A stretch of 64,000 nt of DNA from IMGVR_UViG_3300025098_000012:162699-226698; one strand, 5' to 3'; positions 32,894 through 44,799 are shown, numbered from the stretch's first letter. Notes: generated from the sequence alone by a model not told the origin. Program-made: numbers and translations.

Positions 32894-33487
32894 TTATTTT
32901 AGCAGGTCATACTCTTCTTTAGAGATATAAACAGGATATGGGTTAGGTTGAATTAGATGAGCGTTGAACTCAACTCCAAAGTGATCACACACTGTCTCAA
33001 TGGCATCGAGGTTCTTCTGAGTATCTTCCCAAACAGACACGCTCTGAATGTTAGGGTATTTCTTGAGGAGATCAAAGGTTAGTTTAGCCTTATAGCGAGA
33101 TGTAGACCCTGTGCCTGGTTTTAGGTGAACCTCATCAAAGTCCAACCCTTTACCCTTTAATAGCTCGGCTACACGATAACGCATAGCACCGTTGTCATTA
33201 AGGCGACCTGTACACATGATCGCAAGAGTGTCCATGTCAGAGATAGAGCGTTTAGCTTCACCAACAACACCATTAAACCAATAATCCCCACTAGGCTTTT
33301 GAGGGATAAAAGGTTCACTTAAACTAATGGCCTCGTTGAACCAATAACCCATTTTTTTGTTCGACCACCACTCTGGTGGTTCGGGGCTACGGAACAATGT
33401 ATTATCAAAGTCAAAGATATGAAGCTCAAGACTTTCTGAGCTTGTTTTCATATACTTTGTTGCCACTCTCGCAACAAGATTTCTCAT
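32894..33487 (-). CDS. HAD-family phosphatase ('Swiss Army Knife' RNA-repair type) with RVA tag
   Basis: MRNLVARVATKYMKTS, then IFDFDNTLF, CTGR, WED; GAGGAG RBS; late motif at 33528. Confidence 0.7.
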   Translation of the reverse strand: MRNLVARVATKYMKTSSESLELHIFDFDNTLFRSPEPPEWWSNKKMGYWFNEAISLSEPFIPQKPSGDYWFNGVVGEAKRSISDMDTLAIMCTGRLNDNGAMRYRVAELLKGKGLDFDEVHLKPGTGSTSRYKAKLTFDLLKKYPNIQSVSVWEDTQKNLDAIETVCDHFGVEFNAHLIQPNPYPVYISKEEYDLLK

Positions 33488-33542
33488 GTCTGTTCTCCTC
33501 AAAGGTAATATACAGAAGTATCTCATAATAAAGGATCTACAA

Positions 33543-34424
33543 ATGTTAATTATACTTTCCCCGACATCACAGTTAGCTACTGACACTCTTAGGCTGTCAA
33601 ATCCTCCTGCACTATCGGTAGAAGCAGAATATGGTGGGTTCGTCCTTGAGGGTACAAAATACACTGCCGCTCATCACCAACCACTCGGATCACCTTATGT
33701 CGGTCGCCATGTCACCCCCTTTGGTAGACCTGCACCTTGTAATGACTCCAATATACCAAAGCTCAATGATAATGAAGTAGCCATCATCTCACACCTCGAC
33801 ATCGACACTCTTGGTGGACTTATGAGAGCTACAGATCAGTTCGAGGATAACCCTGTCTTTTGGTTCTATGCTGAACATATCGACACCAATGGCATCCACA
33901 AGGCAAGACAAGACCACCCCTGTTGGGTTCTATATAATGGACTTAACGCATGGATCAATGAAAACTATCCAGAGATAGACACAAAGAGAAACAACGATGT
34001 GACCGATTTCTGCTACAAAGCATTCGACTTCATTAAAGAAATGCTTAATGACGGTCTGCTTGCTACTCGAATGGGTAATGCTCACATCTATCTCCAAGAA
34101 AAGCTCGATGAGTCCTCCTTTGTAGAGATGAAACCATGTGGTCTGATCGTTAGACGAACAAGAGGTGAAAAGGTAAATCATCTCTATCGTGGAGAAAATG
34201 CGATCATCACTTACGATGAAAAATATAAGAAGATTAGGATTTCTACTGCTGACCCCATTCCAAACCTATCTTGTAGACGACTCGTTCAAGAATGGTGGGG
34301 TGATAGAGCTGGTGGACACGATCAGATCGCAGGTTCTGCAAGAGGCCAAATCATGTCCGAAGATCAGTTTAGGGAGGCAATAGAAAGGTTTGAAACTGAA
34401 CTAACTAGAGCATTACAAAGGTAA
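33543..34424 (+). CDS. DHH-like phosphoesterase
   Basis: SHLDIDTLGG and C-terminal GGHDQIAGS; AAGGA RBS before ATG 33543. Confidence 0.5.
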   Translation: MLIILSPTSQLATDTLRLSNPPALSVEAEYGGFVLEGTKYTAAHHQPLGSPYVGRHVTPFGRPAPCNDSNIPKLNDNEVAIISHLDIDTLGGLMRATDQFEDNPVFWFYAEHIDTNGIHKARQDHPCWVLYNGLNAWINENYPEIDTKRNNDVTDFCYKAFDFIKEMLNDGLLATRMGNAHIYLQEKLDESSFVEMKPCGLIVRRTRGEKVNHLYRGENAIITYDEKYKKIRISTADPIPNLSCRRLVQEWWGDRAGGHDQIAGSARGQIMSEDQFREAIERFETELTRALQR

Positions 34425-34427
34425 TAA

Positions 34428-35468
34428 ATGGCTTTCACAGAAAAAGTAAACAACATTAGAAGGGCAAAAAGCCACATCGTTCAAACTTTCCATGAGATCT
34501 TTGAAGAGTTTGATGAACTTTGGGAAAAGAATCCTCACGAAACAGCCACAGGCATAATCAATGAGGTCTTAAAAGAAAGCGGATTTGATCAGTGGATCTG
34601 TGAACACATGAATAGGGATGTTTGGATCAGTGGAGCTGATCAATGCCTTATGGTGTGGGTAAAAACACGAAACTACAAGACCCATATTGATGTAACGATT
34701 GCCTGTCGTGGTTCAGCAAAGAACCTAAAACTAGACACACACAAGCCTCTATGGAAAATGATTGATTTGCTCCTAAGTACGATTAGAGGATCTTACTTCA
34801 AAACTAGAGAGGTCGGATTTGAACAGCTTTTAGAAATCTATTCATTAGAACGATTAGAGGGCATAAAAGAAGATCTAAAAGATCAAGTAGACAGGAAAGC
34901 AAGAGTCATCATCAATCAACAAAGCCAAGAGGTCAAAGATGAACTCAATGACTTGTTCACTGATGTTGAACTCGAAAAGAAGCTGAAGCACATCCAAAAT
35001 AACATCCCAACACTCACAACATATTACGATTGGGAGATGGGTCAAAATGGAGTTACAAAAAGATACTACTCAAAGCAACTCTCGGACTTAGGGAAGAGGC
35101 TTTATAAAGAGTGCTTAGAAGATCGCTTACTTATGATTAACTTCTTAGGGAGCGTTATTATGGAATGTGGGGCGAAGCGAGTTCGTTGCACTAGAAGAAC
35201 CAAACCAACGAGTCCAGATCGAAGCCCTACTTTTCTGTTTGAAAAAAATGGAAAGACCCTCTATGTGCGTTTCTTTCCTGTGTGCATCAATCTCAGCCCA
35301 AGAGAAAACTCTTTTGATGACGAAAATGAGATTGATCTGCCCGAAAATAACCCCGATAAATTCGATATACTCTCAAGCATCGAAAGTCATTGGGAACATC
35401 TATACGGAGAAAACAAAACTCCGTACCTCAACTGGACAATCGAAAACCCATATGGTTGGGTAGATTAA
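34428..35468 (+). CDS. Hypothetical protein
   Basis: 346-aa ORF in operon with the upstream gene. Confidence 0.7.
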   Translation: MAFTEKVNNIRRAKSHIVQTFHEIFEEFDELWEKNPHETATGIINEVLKESGFDQWICEHMNRDVWISGADQCLMVWVKTRNYKTHIDVTIACRGSAKNLKLDTHKPLWKMIDLLLSTIRGSYFKTREVGFEQLLEIYSLERLEGIKEDLKDQVDRKARVIINQQSQEVKDELNDLFTDVELEKKLKHIQNNIPTLTTYYDWEMGQNGVTKRYYSKQLSDLGKRLYKECLEDRLLMINFLGSVIMECGAKRVRCTRRTKPTSPDRSPTFLFEKNGKTLYVRFFPVCINLSPRENSFDDENEIDLPENNPDKFDILSSIESHWEHLYGENKTPYLNWTIENPYGWVD

Positions 35469-36190
35469 GAAGAAGCCATACCAAAGAAGTAATAACCCTC
35501 AACTTTACCTACCTTCTTTTGAATCCTCTTACCACTTACAGTGTAAGTAGCAAGTTTAGAAGATTCAGCATAAGACATACCACCTTGATCTTGTACTTTT
35601 AAAATACGAACAACTTGACCAGGATCAATGTTGTTTGGGCTTTCAAGTAACTCTTTCGTAGAGGCAACAGCCTCTTTCTTTGTAGAATACTTTTTATTAG
35701 TATTGCTACTCCTAATATAAAAAACTTCACCATTTGGTTTATCTGTCGTGATCTTCCTTTTTCCCGCAGGAGTAGTTAAAACTACACCTCCGTTCCAAGG
35801 GATTTCAACCTCAATGACTGCTCCTGCTCTCTTCTTCCCACCCATCATTTTCTCTTGAACCATCTTTTTTGCTTCTTCTTTATTTCGTGCCTTCACCTTT
35901 ACTTCAAATTCCTTTTCGGCAACAACCTTTTCTTCTCCGAAAGCAACACAACCAGCGTCATCCCACTTGCCATAGTCATCATAATGCTCGTCAGCATACT
36001 CTTGAGCTTTCTTCTTAGACATAACTTCACGAGTAGCCATAGTGAAACCGCCTTTTTCAGCAATGGTTCCAGTATAACCACCACTTCCATACTCGTATCG
36101 AGCTTCTTGTACGAGTTCAGCGAATACTCGGTTTGCGTTTGCACCATAGCCAGAATTGACAAAGCCATCTGCTCCTGCTTGTTTCTTCAT
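35465..36190 (-). CDS. Late hypothetical protein
   Basis: AAGGAG RBS before MKKQAGADG; ARYEYGSGGYTGTIAEK; late motif at 36237. Confidence 0.7.
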   Translation of the reverse strand: MKKQAGADGFVNSGYGANANRVFAELVQEARYEYGSGGYTGTIAEKGGFTMATREVMSKKKAQEYADEHYDDYGKWDDAGCVAFGEEKVVAEKEFEVKVKARNKEEAKKMVQEKMMGGKKRAGAVIEVEIPWNGGVVLTTPAGKRKITTDKPNGEVFYIRSSNTNKKYSTKKEAVASTKELLESPNNIDPGQVVRILKVQDQGGMSYAESSKLATYTVSGKRIQKKVGKVEGYYFFGMASS

Positions 36191-36257
36191 AACATTTCTC
36201 CTTGTGTGCCGTGTTAAATCAACACCCATGAGGAGTTATAAAGAAACTACAAAAGCA

Positions 36258-37355
36258 CTAGGCGATCTCTGACCAATCCAAATCCCTAGCCTTAATCGAA
36301 TCATATCCTCGCCTACTACCTAACTCCCAATCAACACTCGCTAACAATAACCTCTTAGCTGTACCCCTACCCAAAAATACGGTCTGCTTCTTAAGGTTGT
36401 TCCTCAAAGTGATGTTCACACTCTTAAAGAGATAACCCTCTTTGAGCTTGTTAATGTAGTCTTCACGACACACTTCCTCTACATCACCCTCTAAGTTGAT
36501 TAACTTCACAGGCTTACTAGACCAACTGCTCACTTGACCGTTAGCCTTAGCCTCCTTGACTCCAGATAACTTAGAGATCACATCATAGTTCACACGCTCT
36601 AAATCAAAGTGCGTTCCAAACTTGAACCCATGATCCAAAACAAGATGCTTCACCACATCATGTTGACCACAACTATATATCCCAATGTCTTCTCTATGAA
36701 TGTTCACAACTCCCTTAGAGCAAAGCGACCAACCCAACCTAAAGTAATCAGATAACTCACCTCTAGGGATCTCAACCTCTACACCTGTACGCACCATCGC
36801 TATCGTATCTGGTTTGTTCTTGCTATGTAGCTTTGCTCTTTTCTTCGGACAGTTTGCAGATGCTTTGATCCTAGCCCTCACCTCTGGATCTTTTAGAGCC
36901 TTTTTGTGCGAATCATGCCATCTTTGGCGAGGTTCACCCTCTCTTGAAGCTAAAACACGCTCCCGATAACTCTCATCTTCCCATAGTTCCTTACCTCTTT
37001 TACTCATCTCCATCTTCACGATAGGATTAGAGCAATAGTGTTTCAAAGCGTTAGAGGATGAACCCATGCCCCCACTGTTCATGTTCAAACAAAGTGGGTC
37101 ATGGTCAGAACCCCCGATATATTTCTCACCAACCAACTCGGCTTCATAAGCGTAAGCGTCATCCTCGTTCTCAAAGACCCTAATGATTTCTTTTTCAAAC
37201 TCATTAGGGTGAGCTTTCATTTTACGCAAGAGCAAGAGTCCAGAGCCTTGATACTTACTCCCATCGGGATCACGATCTGAGTAAGTTCCTTTACCCAAGT
37301 AATACTCGCCTGTCCTCTTGTTGAACTGACGATATACATAATAACCTTTTGCCAT
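36258..37355 (-). mobile_element. Free-standing GIY-YIG (Seg-like) homing endonuclease
   Basis: YYVYRQFNKRTGEYYLGK, YQGSG, FEKEII, EAEL, LNMNSGG; directly downstream of nrdB. Confidence 0.8.
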
Positions 37356-37439
37356 TTCAATGCCTTTCAAAGAAGTTATTGAAAAGCGTACCAAAACGAC
37401 AAATGTTAGTCAAGAACTAAAGGTCATAAATACCTATTT

Positions 37440-38414
37440 TTAGGCGATTTCTGACCAATCCCATTCACCTACAAGACCGTTGGCGGAGTAGTCTGACACA
37501 ACCCCCTCAAAGAAGTTCTTGAAAGAGTCACCACTTACGACCCAATCGAGCCATTGGAGTGGATTTTTCTTTTGTTTGAAGACGGGTTTAAGTCCGAGTT
37601 GTAGAAGTCTACGATCAGCGAGGTATCGGACATAGGTTTTGAGATCATCTGAAGTGAGATCATTGATAGCACCGTTATGATTATAAACGAGGTCAATGAG
37701 TTTATCTTCTAGTTCAACAGCCTTCTCATAGTTTGTGTAGATGTAGCTCTTAAGTTTATCGGTCACAACACGAGGGTGTTCTTCACAATAAGCATGAAAG
37801 AGCTTTGTCATACCCTCTACATGAGTAGATTCATCTCTAATGCTCCATTCCACGATCTCGCACATACCTTTCATCTTCCCGAACCGTTGGAAGTTGAGGA
37901 GCATAACGAAAGCAGAGAATAAGCTCATGCCCTCGTTACATACAGATCGGGCAAGCTCAAATGCGATGTTGGTGATACGACCTAAACCTTCTGGTGCTTG
38001 AGTCATAAACTCGATCTTCTCACGCATCTCATCAAACTCTAGGAACGCAGAGTATTCTTTAACTGCAAGTCCTAGAGTGTCATTTAATAGTGCGTATGCT
38101 CTTTGATGTGTTCCTTCACGATTAGCGAAGGATAAGAGCATATTTCTGATCTCGTTGTTCTTGAACTCTTTGATAAAGATGTCGCAGTAGTTCCCACCGA
38201 CAGCAACATCGGATTGAGTGAAGATCCGTAGGATTTGTGTGATGTGTTGTTTCTCCGAGTCAGAAATCTGACCACCTTTCCATTGGTTCACATCTTCCTG
38301 TAGCTTCGCCTCCCAAGTTCCCCAATGAATTTTCTCGTGTTCCTCTGCGATGTTCATCGCCCAAGGATACTGAAATGGCTTGTAAGTTGTACTGAACTCA
38401 AGTAGTCCTGCCAT
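37440..38414 (-). CDS. nrdB: Ribonucleotide reductase class Ia beta subunit
   Basis: FTQSD, REGTHQRAY, EGMSLFSAF, RDESTH di-iron ligands and radical Tyr. Confidence 0.93.
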   Translation of the reverse strand: MAGLLEFSTTYKPFQYPWAMNIAEEHEKIHWGTWEAKLQEDVNQWKGGQISDSEKQHITQILRIFTQSDVAVGGNYCDIFIKEFKNNEIRNMLLSFANREGTHQRAYALLNDTLGLAVKEYSAFLEFDEMREKIEFMTQAPEGLGRITNIAFELARSVCNEGMSLFSAFVMLLNFQRFGKMKGMCEIVEWSIRDESTHVEGMTKLFHAYCEEHPRVVTDKLKSYIYTNYEKAVELEDKLIDLVYNHNGAINDLTSDDLKTYVRYLADRRLLQLGLKPVFKQKKNPLQWLDWVVSGDSFKNFFEGVVSDYSANGLVGEWDWSEIA

Positions 38415-38480
38415 GTTCTTAACCTCTCGTTATAGAGTTGAATGTTATTGATACCACCCTACAATGAGAGAATATAAAAA

Positions 38481-39077
38481 CTACAAATCACCCATCTTCT
38501 CTTTGAGAACCTTCTTATACTCCGACCATGATCTCCTAAAGGTTCGCATGAAGCCCTCAAGATCATCGTAGAGGCTAGATGGATTGAGTACACCTGTGAG
38601 CTTCGGCAAGTTCCAACCCCCACTGAAGATGTTATCAAGAAACTCCTGTGCATCTTTATGCCCTGTATGCTCTCGCTCATCGTTGAAGTTGATCAAATAC
38701 TCGACTACATCTTCACCGTAGCTAAACTCTATGTCGATCTGTAAGCGATCTTCATCACAGAGCATCACCCCACAAAAGTCACACTCTTCCTCGACTGTTT
38801 CCTCGACTCTAAAGCCAAGCTCATGCAAGAGCTTAAGAAACGCTCCGATAGCGTAAAAGGTGTTTTGGTTTTCAAGCACCTCGTCTGAGACACCACGAAC
38901 ACCATTACGCTTCTCGGTCATCCGTTGCTCTATGAGATTTTGTCGAGCGTTTTCCTCGATAGCACACTCAAACATAAGTCCGTATGTGCGAAATGTGTCT
39001 TCAACACCTTTAAGTGCAGTGTCAGTTTCAAGAAAGTCTGCGAAGATGAACTTCTCGTCATCATGGATCTCATTCAT
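38481..39077 (-). CDS. Hypothetical protein
   Basis: AGGAGG RBS; GTAACCCCTTAT motif at 39102. Confidence 0.7.
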   Translation of the reverse strand: MNEIHDDEKFIFADFLETDTALKGVEDTFRTYGLMFECAIEENARQNLIEQRMTEKRNGVRGVSDEVLENQNTFYAIGAFLKLLHELGFRVEETVEEECDFCGVMLCDEDRLQIDIEFSYGEDVVEYLINFNDEREHTGHKDAQEFLDNIFSGGWNLPKLTGVLNPSSLYDDLEGFMRTFRRSWSEYKKVLKEKMGDL

Positions 39078-43035: not shown

Positions 43036-44799
43036 TCAGCCTTGACAGCTCATACATTCATCAAGATCATAATCTTTTAATGCCTTACGCTCAATCTTCT
43101 CACTCACTTTATCGGCTACAACACCAGCGTTGGTGCGAAGATAGTACAAGCCCTTGAGCTTCTTCTTCCATGCACTCAAATGAACAGCGTTGACATAGTT
43201 CTTATCTGAACCAGCAGGGAAGAATAAGTTGACCGACTGACCTTGGCAAACCCACTCTTGACGAACGGAAGCGTGTTCCACAATCCACATTTGGTCGATC
43301 TCAAAAGCAGTCTTGAATGTGTCCTTTTCAATCTGAGTTAAGAAATCTAAGTGCTGTACGCTCCCTTGATTGAGGATGATACTCTGACGCACTTCATCGA
43401 GATCAATGTCCTCTTTCTTCTCAAGCACAGCTTCAAGATACTTATTGAACTGCAAAAACGACCCTGCTCGTGTCCTATGCGTAAACGCATTTGACTTCCA
43501 AGGTTCGATACTTGGGCTTGTATCGAGAATGATAGCCGAGTTAGCGTTTGGGGCGATGGCGAGAAGATGGCTATTCCTCATGCCCGATCCGATACCGTCA
43601 AGGTACTCACCCTTGATTTCTGCTAAACGCTTAGAGGAAGCTACTGCTCGTTCTTTGATGGTTGAGTAAATCTTACGGTTAGCCGAGACAGCAAAGATCG
43701 ACTCAAAGGGCAGACCCTTTTTTTGAAGATAGGCATGAAAACCCATTGTACCTAAACCAAGAGAGCGTTCGGCTTCTGCACTCTTGATCGCCTTCTCAAG
43801 TTGAGGGGGAGCGTTTTCAATGAAATACTGTAGGACATCATCTAAGAACTCGATCAAGTCCTCAACGATGGGGGTATCTTTCCATTCATCGAACATTTCA
43901 ACATTGAGACTAGATAGACAACAGACTGCCGAGCGATTAGGACCTGTGGGAAGATGAATTTCATTACAGAGATTTGAGCCATGTATCTCCAACCCCTTAT
44001 CCTTGAGGGGCTGTGGGAGATGTCTATTGGCTTCATCAATAAAGTTGAGGTAAGGCTCTCCTGTACGGAAGCGTACTTCAAGGATGCGTTGCCATAGTTC
44101 ACGAGCATCTACGGTGTCTCTGACTGTATTATCGGCAGGGTCAATGAGATTCCAAGTTCCACCGCTCATCACAGCAGTCATAAACTCATCAGTAATGTTA
44201 AGGGCATTGTTAAGGTTGAAACACTTACGGTTAGTGTCTCCACCTGTAGGAAGTCGAAGGTTCATAAACTCAACGACATCGGGGTGGCTAATGTCGAGGT
44301 AAGCCGCATAACTACCTTTGCGTGTAGACCCTTGCCTATACGCAACCATATCCGAGTCTACGGTTTTGAGAAAAGGAATAGGTCCTGGTGCTTTTTTGCT
44401 AACTGAGCGAACATCATCCCAATGTCCACCGACACCCCCTCCCATAACGCTCATCCACCGAAGCTCCTCTGTGTGTTCGATCAGACCCTCAACTGTGTCG
44501 GGTACATAAGTGAGGAAGCAAGAAATCGGCATACCTGTACTCTCAGCGTTCGAGAGTATAGGTGAACTGAACATGAACCAACCTTTGGTTGCGTACTCTA
44601 ACACCCTCTCAGCAAGTTCTTTATTTGGGGTGTATGCGTAAGCGGCTCTCCTAAATGCTTCCTGTGGTGATCCGTCCGACTCTTTCATGTAATAAGAGTT
44701 CAATAGTGTCAATGCGTGGTCTGAAAAAGGGAATCCCATGCCTTTTCCTTTCATTTTTTCAATCGGTTTTTTCTCATAGTTGCACTTGAGTTCTCTCAA
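43036..44799 (-). CDS. nrdA: Ribonucleotide reductase class Ia alpha subunit
   Basis: PISCFL, GGGVG, GSNLCNEI, VCCLSSLN, APNANS, QGQSVN, LYYLR, C-terminal CMSCQG. Confidence 0.93.
   Translation of the reverse strand: MRELKCNYEKKPIEKMKGKGMGFPFSDHALTLLNSYYMKESDGSPQEAFRRAAYAYTPNKELAERVLEYATKGWFMFSSPILSNAESTGMPISCFLTYVPDTVEGLIEHTEELRWMSVMGGGVGGHWDDVRSVSKKAPGPIPFLKTVDSDMVAYRQGSTRKGSYAAYLDISHPDVVEFMNLRLPTGGDTNRKCFNLNNALNITDEFMTAVMSGGTWNLIDPADNTVRDTVDARELWQRILEVRFRTGEPYLNFIDEANRHLPQPLKDKGLEIHGSNLCNEIHLPTGPNRSAVCCLSSLNVEMFDEWKDTPIVEDLIEFLDDVLQYFIENAPPQLEKAIKSAEAERSLGLGTMGFHAYLQKKGLPFESIFAVSANRKIYSTIKERAVASSKRLAEIKGEYLDGIGSGMRNSHLLAIAPNANSAIILDTSPSIEPWKSNAFTHRTRAGSFLQFNKYLEAVLEKKEDIDLDEVRQSIILNQGSVQHLDFLTQIEKDTFKTAFEIDQMWIVEHASVRQEWVCQGQSVNLFFPAGSDKNYVNAVHLSAWKKKLKGLYYLRTNAGVVADKVSEKIERKALKDYDLDECMSCQG

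What the first reader, a model, noticed from the sequence alone, without database searches (positions are those of the whole stretch)
36258..37461. GIY-YIG endonuclease ends with the same peptide as nrdB (DWSEIA*)
Seen: 36259-36279 and 37441-37461 match at 20/21 nt, and both ORFs terminate D-W-S-E-I-A-stop. Inference: the endonuclease inserted at the 3' end of nrdB with duplication, capturing the original nrdB end as its own C-terminus. Established: the NrdB C-terminal tail binds NrdA, so the endonuclease may carry an NrdA-binding peptide.
Basis: partly seen in the sequence, partly recalled or inferred. Interest (0 to 1): 0.6.

Follow-up and report, generated by a model that had tools for sequence, protein, structure and literature searches.

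The report
Homing endonuclease cassette duplicating nrdB's end
A selfish endonuclease gene sits inside the last codons of a marine jumbo phage's ribonucleotide reductase gene nrdB, carries a spare copy of those codons so nrdB stays intact, and reads through the displaced original ones, which is why both proteins end in DWSEIA.

Summary
A 21-nt direct repeat (20/21) occurs only twice in the 226.7-kb record, and both ORFs end in DWSEIA. The repeats flank a 1182-nt unit holding a copy of the nrdB end with a TAA stop, an 84-nt regulatory spacer, and a GIY-YIG-type homing endonuclease (HEG) ORF with no stop codon of its own.

Endonuclease-free relatives with at least 90% identical NrdB (L113/L114) have nrdB running straight into the sequence and gene that follow the HEG in the window.

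More distant orthologues of the HEG sit just after the nrdB stop, without the repeat or the tail. The duplication is therefore a variant confined to one subclade.

Among HEG-bearing genomes a highly similar block runs from the nrdB 3' part through the HEG and stops at the right repeat. This is a homing and co-conversion signature.

The shared peptide is best read as a DNA-level by-product. Two close relatives have lost it while keeping the ORF intact. The closest precedent is the fungal mitochondrial mobile-ORF elements that carry C-terminal duplications.

The parts
37440..38414 (-). nrdB, the class I ribonucleotide reductase small subunit (324 aa), ending GEWDWSEIA with a TAA stop
   Evidence: Pfam PF00268 E 4e-64; PHROG 86 E 5e-77. 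The tail motif G[DE][WF]DW.. is conserved in relatives with and without the endonuclease.
37441..37461 (-). Left copy of the 21-nt direct repeat (R): the last six nrdB codons plus part of the TAA stop. This is the replacement end that keeps nrdB intact.
   Evidence: A TAA stop followed by the spacer is seen where the endonuclease spacer is present.
37356..37439 (-). 84-nt spacer (S) between nrdB and the endonuclease. It has a conserved TTGACT box (37408-37413) and TACGCT (37385-37390), and a hairpin (37351-37400) that pairs the Shine-Dalgarno GAAAGG and the ATG.
   Evidence: The spacer is conserved ahead of every orthologue. The motif is unique in the window. RNA fold gives -18.9 kcal/mol, z -4.4. 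The consensus promoter scan did not list it.
36258..37355 (-). Homing endonuclease ORF (365 aa). It has a GIY-YIG-type N-terminal domain (aa 1 to about 95), a helical repeat linker, and a confidently folded C-terminal domain (aa 280-355). It has no stop codon of its own and ends in the displaced nrdB codons.
   Evidence: dN/dS is 0.13-0.38 against orthologues. Orthologues L086, L090 and L092 stop right after K-[SG]-[LV].
36259..36279 (-). Right copy of the repeat (R'): the displaced original nrdB end, now the endonuclease's last six codons DWSEIA plus a TAG stop
   Evidence: Colinear with the nrdB end (TAG stop) and flank of the endonuclease-free L113/L114. It is the right edge of the highly similar block shared by endonuclease-bearing genomes.
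36280..37461 (-). The inserted unit, 1182 nt (R + S + endonuclease ORF up to its last native codon TTG). Removing it in silico restores an uninterrupted nrdB identical to the native one.
35465..36257 (-). Original nrdB-downstream flank (36191-36257) and the next gene (241 aa from the ATG at 36190, no family match)
   Evidence: 35/40 identity in the first 40 nt after the stop; 755 identities over the 830 aligned positions (57 further columns are gaps); and 88% protein identity to the region that directly follows nrdB in L113. No Pfam or PHROG hit.
43036..44799 (-). nrdA, the RNR large subunit (587 aa as listed): the proposed partner of the NrdB tail
   Evidence: PF02867 E 1e-106 and PF00317.

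Best explanation
The repeat marks a free-standing GIY-YIG-type homing endonuclease cassette lodged inside the last six codons of nrdB. The cassette brings its own copy of those codons and a TAA stop, so NrdB is made unchanged. It also brings an 84-nt regulatory spacer and an endonuclease ORF that has lost its own stop codon. That ORF runs on into the displaced original nrdB end and uses its TAG, so the shared DWSEIA peptide is a by-product of how the DNA was joined. Shown here: the anatomy of the cassette; the matching endonuclease-free allele; the sporadic presence of the endonuclease; purifying selection on the ORF; and a highly similar block, shared by diverged genomes, that starts in the nrdB 3' part and ends at the right repeat. 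Inferred: the enzyme cuts endonuclease-free nrdB 3' ends during co-infection, and break repair copies the cassette. Its recognition site must be longer than the 21-nt repeat, otherwise carrier genomes would be cut. The right repeat, being the conserved gene end, serves as the right-hand homology arm. That would let the cassette enter genomes whose DNA downstream of nrdB is unrelated. The founding junction was probably an illegitimate join between an older-type donor (cassette just after the nrdB stop) and an endonuclease-free recipient.
For: 1. The repeat is real and occurs only twice.
2. The endonuclease-free L113/L114 have nrdB, the same 21 nt, a TAG stop, and then the same flank and gene as follow the endonuclease in the window. 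In-silico removal of the 1182-nt unit gives a colinear locus, with 84/93 identities just after the junction.
3. The right copy has TAG like the empty site, whereas the left copy has TAA followed by the spacer.
4. All 12 full-length or partial orthologues lie directly after nrdB. Only the subclade at least 86% identical to the window's protein carries the tail; the others end K-[SG]-[LV] plus 0-2 residues.
5. The endonuclease is present or absent among near-identical backbones: L004 (present) and L115 (absent) have 99.4% identical nrdB.
6. Block structure among carriers: endonuclease 91-97% identity; last 185 nt of nrdB 92-96% in four of five genomes; rest of nrdB 79-89%; upstream 1 kb 50-83%. 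On the right side identity falls from 96-98% and 20-21/21 in the repeat to 63-83% in the next 40 nt.
7. dN/dS is 0.13-0.38.
8. Decay products exist: 57-59-aa remnants (L110/L111), tail deletions (L103, L104), and an allele with the spacer but no endonuclease (L115-L118).
9. No group I intron or other Rfam family lies in 35400-38600.
10. There is a precedent in fungal mitochondria (PMC3630166).
Against: No cleavage site or activity is known. The family assignment rests on motifs, a PHROG hit and weak fold matches. Orthologues without the duplication show that it is not needed for residence next to nrdB. A 21-nt homology arm is short. The empty-site allele could in principle be a revertant made by recombination between the two repeats, so colinearity alone does not give the direction of the event. 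The TAG stop and Z-like sequences after nrdB in more distant endonuclease-free relatives (L008, L014) argue for insertion, but only weakly. In L094 both copies share a GGT codon and the repeat seems to extend 18 nt past the stop. That points to gene conversion between the copies and is not predicted by a simple one-step model.
Confidence: 0.7

Rival explanations
1. The tail is a selected functional mimic. The endonuclease keeps the NrdB C-terminal peptide because it docks onto NrdA, for example to ride with the dNTP-synthesis or replication machinery or to modulate RNR.
For: The six terminal residues are identical to NrdB's. The tail follows a confidently folded domain and is itself low-confidence, so probably flexible. 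NrdA is encoded 5.6 kb away. From general knowledge, short C-terminal R2 peptides can bind R1 in other class I RNRs. The tail is retained in six of eight distinct variants of the subclade.
Against: It is fully explained at the DNA level. It is lost or replaced in P0018 and P0020 with the ORF intact. It is absent from all more distant orthologues. It lacks the first Trp of the conserved G[DE]WDW motif. Being in frame is a one-in-three outcome. No binding test could be run.
Confidence: 0.07
2. This was a secondary local event in a genome that already carried the endonuclease. A short patch of the resident nrdB end was copied to the endonuclease's stop codon by template switching or gene conversion, unrelated to any insertion.
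For: Older orthologues at the same site lack the repeat. The flank after the right copy is homologous to the flank after tail-less orthologues. L094 shows that the two copies can be homogenised.
Against: The right copy carries TAG and is followed by the empty-site flank, not by the TAA and spacer of the resident left copy. The window's flank is closer to the endonuclease-free L113 (35/40) than to other carriers (26-30/41). A patch landing exactly at the last sense codon and ending exactly at the nrdB stop would be a coincidence.
Confidence: 0.15
3. The match is due to chance or to an assembly artefact.
For: None beyond the shortness of the repeat.
Against: Zero matches in 100 shuffles. The same structure is found in assemblies from several samples and assemblers.
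Confidence: 0.01

Closest known systems
Fungal mitochondrial mobile ORF elements (mORFs) with carboxy-terminal duplication: Allomyces macrogynus atp6 (Paquin et al. 1994) and Glomus atp6, atp9, cox2, nad3 (PMC3630166)
   Same: An endonuclease ORF is lodged in the 3' part of a conserved gene. The element supplies an in-phase replacement C-terminus, and the native C-terminus is displaced downstream. The element is present in some close relatives and absent from others.
   Different: This case is in a phage. The duplication is only 21 nt (six codons) rather than tens to hundreds of nt. The endonuclease is a separate cistron with its own spacer and ribosome-binding site, not fused to the host gene. 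The displaced native end is translated as the endonuclease's own C-terminus. The two copies are nearly identical, so a foreign origin of the inserted copy cannot be shown.
Free-standing GIY-YIG homing endonucleases of T4-like phages (Seg proteins; I-TevI as the structural model)
   Same: A GIY-YIG-type N-terminal domain, a linker and a C-terminal domain. The gene lies next to a nucleotide-metabolism gene, is sporadically distributed, shows co-conversion of flanking DNA, and has a ribosome-binding site sequestered in a hairpin (PMC2988022).
   Different: Seg genes sit in intergenic regions with their own stop codons. The T4 review does not mention a terminal duplication of the target gene. Pfam does not recognise this protein.
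mobE of phages T4 and Aeh1 (an HNH endonuclease between or within RNR genes; Friedrich et al. 2007, cited in PMC2988022)
   Same: A homing endonuclease associated with phage RNR genes that invades the coding region while RNR function is kept.
   Different: mobE belongs to the HNH family, and in Aeh1 it splits nrdA into two polypeptides. Here nrdB stays whole because its end is duplicated.
C-terminal tail of class I RNR small subunits, which binds the large subunit
   Same: The same six terminal residues as this phage's NrdB, at a free C-terminus.
   Different: They are attached to an unrelated protein, the upstream conserved Trp is missing, and no evidence of binding exists.

Membership tests
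GIY-YIG nuclease superfamily | GIY ... (10-11 residues) ... YIG motif near the N-terminus | tested here: met
   Y6-V7-Y8 and Y19-L20-G21 with 10 residues between them; nearly invariant in 14 homologues.
GIY-YIG nuclease superfamily | Conserved Arg, Glu and Asn of the active site | tested here: inconclusive
   R44 is nearly invariant, and E71 and N91 are invariant. Their positions resemble I-TevI R27, E75 and N90 as I recall them. No residue-level superposition was made.
GIY-YIG nuclease superfamily | beta-beta-alpha-beta-alpha fold matching solved GIY-YIG domains | tested here: inconclusive
   The predicted secondary structure is E5-12, E18-24, H40-48, E53-61, H64-75, but pLDDT there is 42-69. 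Foldseek top hits are PD-T4-3, I-TevI (1ln0, 1mk0) and UvrC, with prob up to 0.99 and E 0.05-1.
GIY-YIG nuclease superfamily | Match to Pfam PF01541 above the gathering score | tested here: not met
   No hit for the window protein. One of 14 homologues hits at E 0.013. PHROG 314 'homing endonuclease' does hit, at E 6e-15.
Free-standing homing endonuclease gene (mobile element) | Present or absent among otherwise near-identical genomes at one conserved site | tested here: met
   L004 (present) versus L115 (absent) have 99.4% identical nrdB. L113/L114 are empty sites. All orthologues lie after nrdB.
Free-standing homing endonuclease gene (mobile element) | Element and adjacent flank more similar between genomes than the backbone (co-conversion) | tested here: met
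Free-standing homing endonuclease gene (mobile element) | Site-specific cleavage of the element-free allele | not testable with these tools
   Needs protein expression and cleavage mapping.
mORF-type element with C-terminal duplication | Inserted replacement C-terminus in phase with the host gene, and native C-terminus displaced downstream of the endonuclease ORF | tested here: met
   The left copy completes nrdB. The right copy plus flank is colinear with the empty site.
mORF-type element with C-terminal duplication | Inserted copy demonstrably foreign (more divergent than the native copy) | tested here: inconclusive
   Only one coding difference and the stop codon differ, which is too little signal.
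mORF-type element with C-terminal duplication | Endonuclease ORF fused in phase to the host gene (seen in several fungal cases) | tested here: not met
   A TAA stop, an 84-nt spacer and a separate ribosome-binding site and ATG separate the two ORFs.
Group I intron or intein carrying the endonuclease | Intron RNA fold, or an in-frame protein-splicing domain | tested here: not met
   No Rfam match at E up to 1 in 35400-38600. Stop codon and spacer lie between the ORFs.
NrdA-binding C-terminal tail of class I RNR beta | Binds the large subunit | not testable with these tools
The sequence is identical over 6 residues only.

The most novel reading that the evidence does not exclude
The duplicated gene end is an adaptation of the selfish element. 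By carrying the conserved last 21 nt of nrdB at its right border, the cassette places both homology arms inside a conserved essential gene, as an intron or intein does. It can then home into phages whose DNA downstream of nrdB is unrelated, and the host gene is never damaged. A further, less likely layer (about 0.07) is that the captured peptide also tethers the nuclease to NrdA.
Probability: 0.4. Interest if true: 0.6.

Novelty: new variant of a known kind. Interest (0 to 1): 0.45.

Why it matters
Homing endonucleases next to phage RNR genes are common. What is unusual here is a free-standing cassette that enters the coding region, repairs the gene with a built-in spare end, and borrows the displaced end, including its stop codon, for its own ORF. 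I found this described only for fungal mitochondrial mobile ORFs, not for phages.

The locus offers a natural series: empty site, older intergenic insertion, duplicated insertion, and several decay products. This series could be used to test how much flanking homology a homing element needs, and how such elements cope with hypervariable neighbourhoods.

It is also a caution for annotation. Identical terminal peptides in neighbouring genes can be recombination scars rather than shared functional modules.

Tried and rejected
- **Megablast against the phage collection:** no match for 35400-38500.
- **Pfam and NCBIfam:** nothing significant for the endonuclease.
- **Profile search of PDB sequences:** only spurious hits.
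- **Pattern scan of IMG/VR for the right repeat with TAG:** found nothing, with the window's own record left out of the results.
- **Metagenome scan with the endonuclease:** added only one identical and four outgroup loci.
- **Spacer-like sequence after the endonuclease in L103 as promoter consensus:** considered and rejected, because the motif is unique in the window.
- **Group I intron or intein:** considered and rejected (stop codon and spacer present).
- **Homology between the spacer and the downstream flank, and the exact founding junction:** I tried to read deeper homology from short AT-rich matches and to fix whether 21, 25 or 33 nt were inserted. The alignments are too short to decide, so I leave this open.
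- **Two joints in run X4** (36255 to 37441 and 36292 to 37438): they suggest an allele with the endonuclease deleted and both repeats kept about 36 nt apart. I could not fetch that contig, so this remains tentative.

Full report
**Setting.** The window is the last 64 kb of a 226,698-nt IMG/VR virus record. It comes from marine metagenomes, and near-identical contigs of up to about 345 kb exist. It is therefore a marine jumbo phage with no cultured relative in the phage collection. The region of interest reads on the minus strand.

**Observation.**
- nrdB (37440-38414; PF00268, E 4e-64) ends GEWDWSEIA with a TAA stop.
- After 84 nt a second ORF starts at the ATG at 37355 and runs to 36258, ending ARDLDWSEIA with a TAG stop.
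- Positions 36259-36279 and 37441-37461 agree at 20 of 21.
- No other copy exists in the window (0.00 expected by chance) or in the whole record.
- The arrangement recurs in independent assemblies.

**What the second ORF is.**
- Pfam and NCBIfam do not recognise it.
- PHROG 314 'homing endonuclease' matches at E 6e-15.
- The N-terminus has YVY, ten residues, then YLG. R44, E71 and N91 are (nearly) invariant in 14 homologues.
- An AlphaFold model built on that alignment has low overall confidence (mean pLDDT 58.6). It does show the beta-beta-alpha-beta-alpha order at the N-terminus and a confident C-terminal domain at residues 280-355.
- Foldseek ranks GIY-YIG nucleases first (PD-T4-3, I-TevI 1ln0 and 1mk0, UvrC), with probability 0.99 but E-values of only about 0.05-0.09.

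I accept 'GIY-YIG-type homing endonuclease' as the working assignment, with moderate support. dN/dS against orthologues is 0.13-0.38, so the ORF encodes a protein under selection.

**Where the tail belongs.** Eighty relatives of NrdB were fetched. All end with a G[DE][WF]DW-type tail, whether or not an endonuclease follows. DWSEIA is therefore native to NrdB. The endonuclease family was found only directly downstream of nrdB, preceded by a homologous spacer. The one exception is a second copy next to a UvrD-type helicase gene in L110.

The more distant orthologues (57-75% identity) end K-[SG]-[LV] plus zero to two residues, and no repeat is detectable there. The NrdB-like tail is confined to the subclade at least 86% identical to the window's protein (P0001, P0014, P0017, P0021: DWSEIA; P0002: DWSGIA). 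Within that subclade:
- P0020 stops after DWS, because unrelated DNA replaces the rest.
- P0018 ends ESLVLD, because a copy of the nrdB-endonuclease spacer replaces the tail.

**The empty site.** Looking up other members of the NrdB clusters gave endonuclease-free close relatives.
- **L113/L114.** nrdB ends with the same 21 nt (one codon GGT instead of GAG) and a TAG stop. It is followed at once by the flank and the 241-aa gene that follow the endonuclease in the window.
- **In-silico removal.** Removing the 1182-nt unit 36280-37461 leaves an NrdB identical to the native protein and a locus colinear with L113. There are 84/93 identities in the first 100 alignment columns after the junction, and 755 identities over the 830 aligned positions of repeat, flank and next gene, with 57 further columns being gaps.
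- **Which copy is original.** The right copy shares the TAG stop with the empty site. The left copy has TAA followed by the spacer. The right copy is therefore the displaced original gene end, and the left copy came with the cassette.
- **L115-L118.** This second endonuclease-free allele keeps the left copy and the whole spacer but lacks the endonuclease and about 2.9 kb after it. Its nrdB is 99.4% identical to that of the endonuclease-bearing L004. I read it as a deletion derivative.
- **L110/L111.** Remnant ORFs of 57-59 aa show internal deletions of the endonuclease.

Together these are the stages expected for a homing endonuclease gene: invasion, residence, decay and loss.

**Evidence of movement.** Among five endonuclease-bearing genomes, pairwise identities are as follows.

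| Segment | Identity between carriers |
|---|---|
| Upstream 1 kb | 50-83% |
| Rest of nrdB | 79-89% |
| Last 185 nt of nrdB | 92-96% (four of the five genomes) |
| Spacer | 81-98% |
| Endonuclease | 91-97% |
| Last 200 nt of the endonuclease | 96-98% |
| Right repeat | 20-21 of 21 |
| Next 40 nt after the repeat | 63-83% |

The window's own downstream flank is closer to the endonuclease-free L113 (35/40) than to other carriers. A highly similar block thus sits in diverged backgrounds, with a co-conversion tract on the nrdB side and a sharp right edge at the repeat.

**Mechanism proposed.**
- **Shown:** the anatomy, the empty site, the block structure and the decay series.
- **Inferred, homing:** the enzyme cuts endonuclease-free nrdB 3' ends in mixed infections, and the break is repaired from the carrier genome.
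- **Inferred, immunity:** carrier genomes keep an intact copy of the gene end on the left and of the end plus flank on the right. Immunity therefore requires a recognition site that spans more than the 21-nt repeat. This fits the 30-40-bp sites of I-TevI-type enzymes (general knowledge).
- **Inferred, homology arm:** because the region after nrdB is hypervariable in these phages, a right border made of the conserved gene end would let repair finish inside nrdB, whatever lies downstream. The sharp right edge fits this. I rate this add-on at about 0.4.
- **Inferred, founding event:** it was probably an illegitimate join between the last sense codon of an older-type cassette and the recipient's gene end. 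The exact junction cannot be recovered from such short sequences.

**The peptide.** The endonuclease reads DWSEIA because it enters the displaced end in the nrdB frame. The other two frames would also have ended, after 10 and 13 codons, so no selection is needed to explain an open frame. The tail follows a folded domain and is modelled with low confidence, so it is probably exposed. NrdA is encoded nearby. Loss of the tail in two close variants, its absence from older orthologues and the missing first Trp all argue that it is incidental.

**Regulatory anatomy.** The spacer carries a conserved TTGACT box and TACGCT 17 nt apart. A hairpin (-18.9 kcal/mol, z -4.4) pairs the Shine-Dalgarno sequence and the start codon. 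Transcripts reading through from nrdB would have the start site closed. Transcripts starting at the internal box would lack the 5' arm of the hairpin. This resembles the translational control described for T4 homing endonucleases (PMC2988022), but it is inference only. The generic promoter scan did not list the site.

**Comparison with known systems.** The closest match in architecture is the fungal mitochondrial mobile ORF with carboxy-terminal duplication (Paquin et al. 1994, as cited in PMC3630166). Within phages the closest are the free-standing GIY-YIG Seg genes, and mobE in the RNR genes of T4 and Aeh1 (PMC2988022). Homing endonucleases are known to cluster near RNR genes (PMC10448857). 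I found no description of a terminal duplication of the target gene for phage elements in these papers. That is an absence in a limited search, not proof.

**Open points.**
- In L094 the two ends of a 1201-nt Logan contig overlap by 21 nt. The right copy is followed by TAA and the start of the spacer, and both copies carry GGT. By de Bruijn logic, assuming k = 31 for Logan assemblies (recalled from memory, not checked here), this implies an exact repeat of about 39 nt. It points to gene conversion between the copies, or to insertion into a spacer-bearing allele.
- Run X4 holds a contig whose joints suggest both repeats about 36 nt apart with the endonuclease gone. I could not retrieve it.

**Verdict.** The finding is real. 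The NrdA-binding idea stays speculative. I class the finding as a new variant of a known kind, of moderate interest.

Noticed in passing
window 37351-37400 (minus strand): A stable hairpin (-18.9 kcal/mol, z -4.4) pairs the endonuclease's Shine-Dalgarno sequence and ATG. The conserved TACGCT box lies inside its 5' arm, so only read-through transcripts would be closed. This resembles the control of T4 homing endonuclease genes.
   Followed up: partly
L110 861-1034 and 1624-2697; L111 995-1174: These relatives carry a 57-59-aa remnant of the endonuclease after nrdB (an internal deletion). L110 also has a second, intact copy of the family in front of a UvrD-type helicase gene, preceded by a terminator-like hairpin instead of the nrdB spacer.
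   Followed up: partly
L094 1-21 and 1181-1201: The two ends of this 1201-nt contig overlap by 21 nt. This implies an exact repeat of about 39 nt that reaches 18 nt past the stop codon, with both copies reading SGIA. It suggests gene conversion between the two copies.
   Followed up: partly
L106/L107/L108, nrdB 3' end: nrdB ends DWSEISKK in these genomes, apparently through a one-base loss before the stop, while the copy behind the endonuclease still reads DWSEIA. The extreme NrdB C-terminus tolerates change.
   Followed up: no
window 33000-37400 and the matching parts of L103, L104, L105, L113, L115: The stretch between nrdB and the UvrD/RecD-type helicase gene differs in gene content in almost every relative (0 to 5 small genes, on either strand). 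It is a hot spot of rearrangement next to the endonuclease.
   Followed up: partly
nrdB alignment, columns 701-800 (window about 37620-37720): nrdB is mosaic. In this 100-nt bin the window differs from L105 at 34 positions but from L113 and L103 at only 1, against 10-20 elsewhere. This indicates recombination inside the gene.
   Followed up: no
run X4 laid on window 36255-37441: A contig at depth 38.5 joins the nrdB end to the last 20 nt or so of the endonuclease and then to the downstream flank. This looks like an allele that lost the endonuclease but kept both repeat copies.
   Followed up: partly
window 43036-44799 (minus strand): The NrdA ORF is short (587 aa as listed). It matches only the all-alpha and barrel domains, with no ATP-cone hit, and the barrel match is in two stretches.
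   Followed up: no
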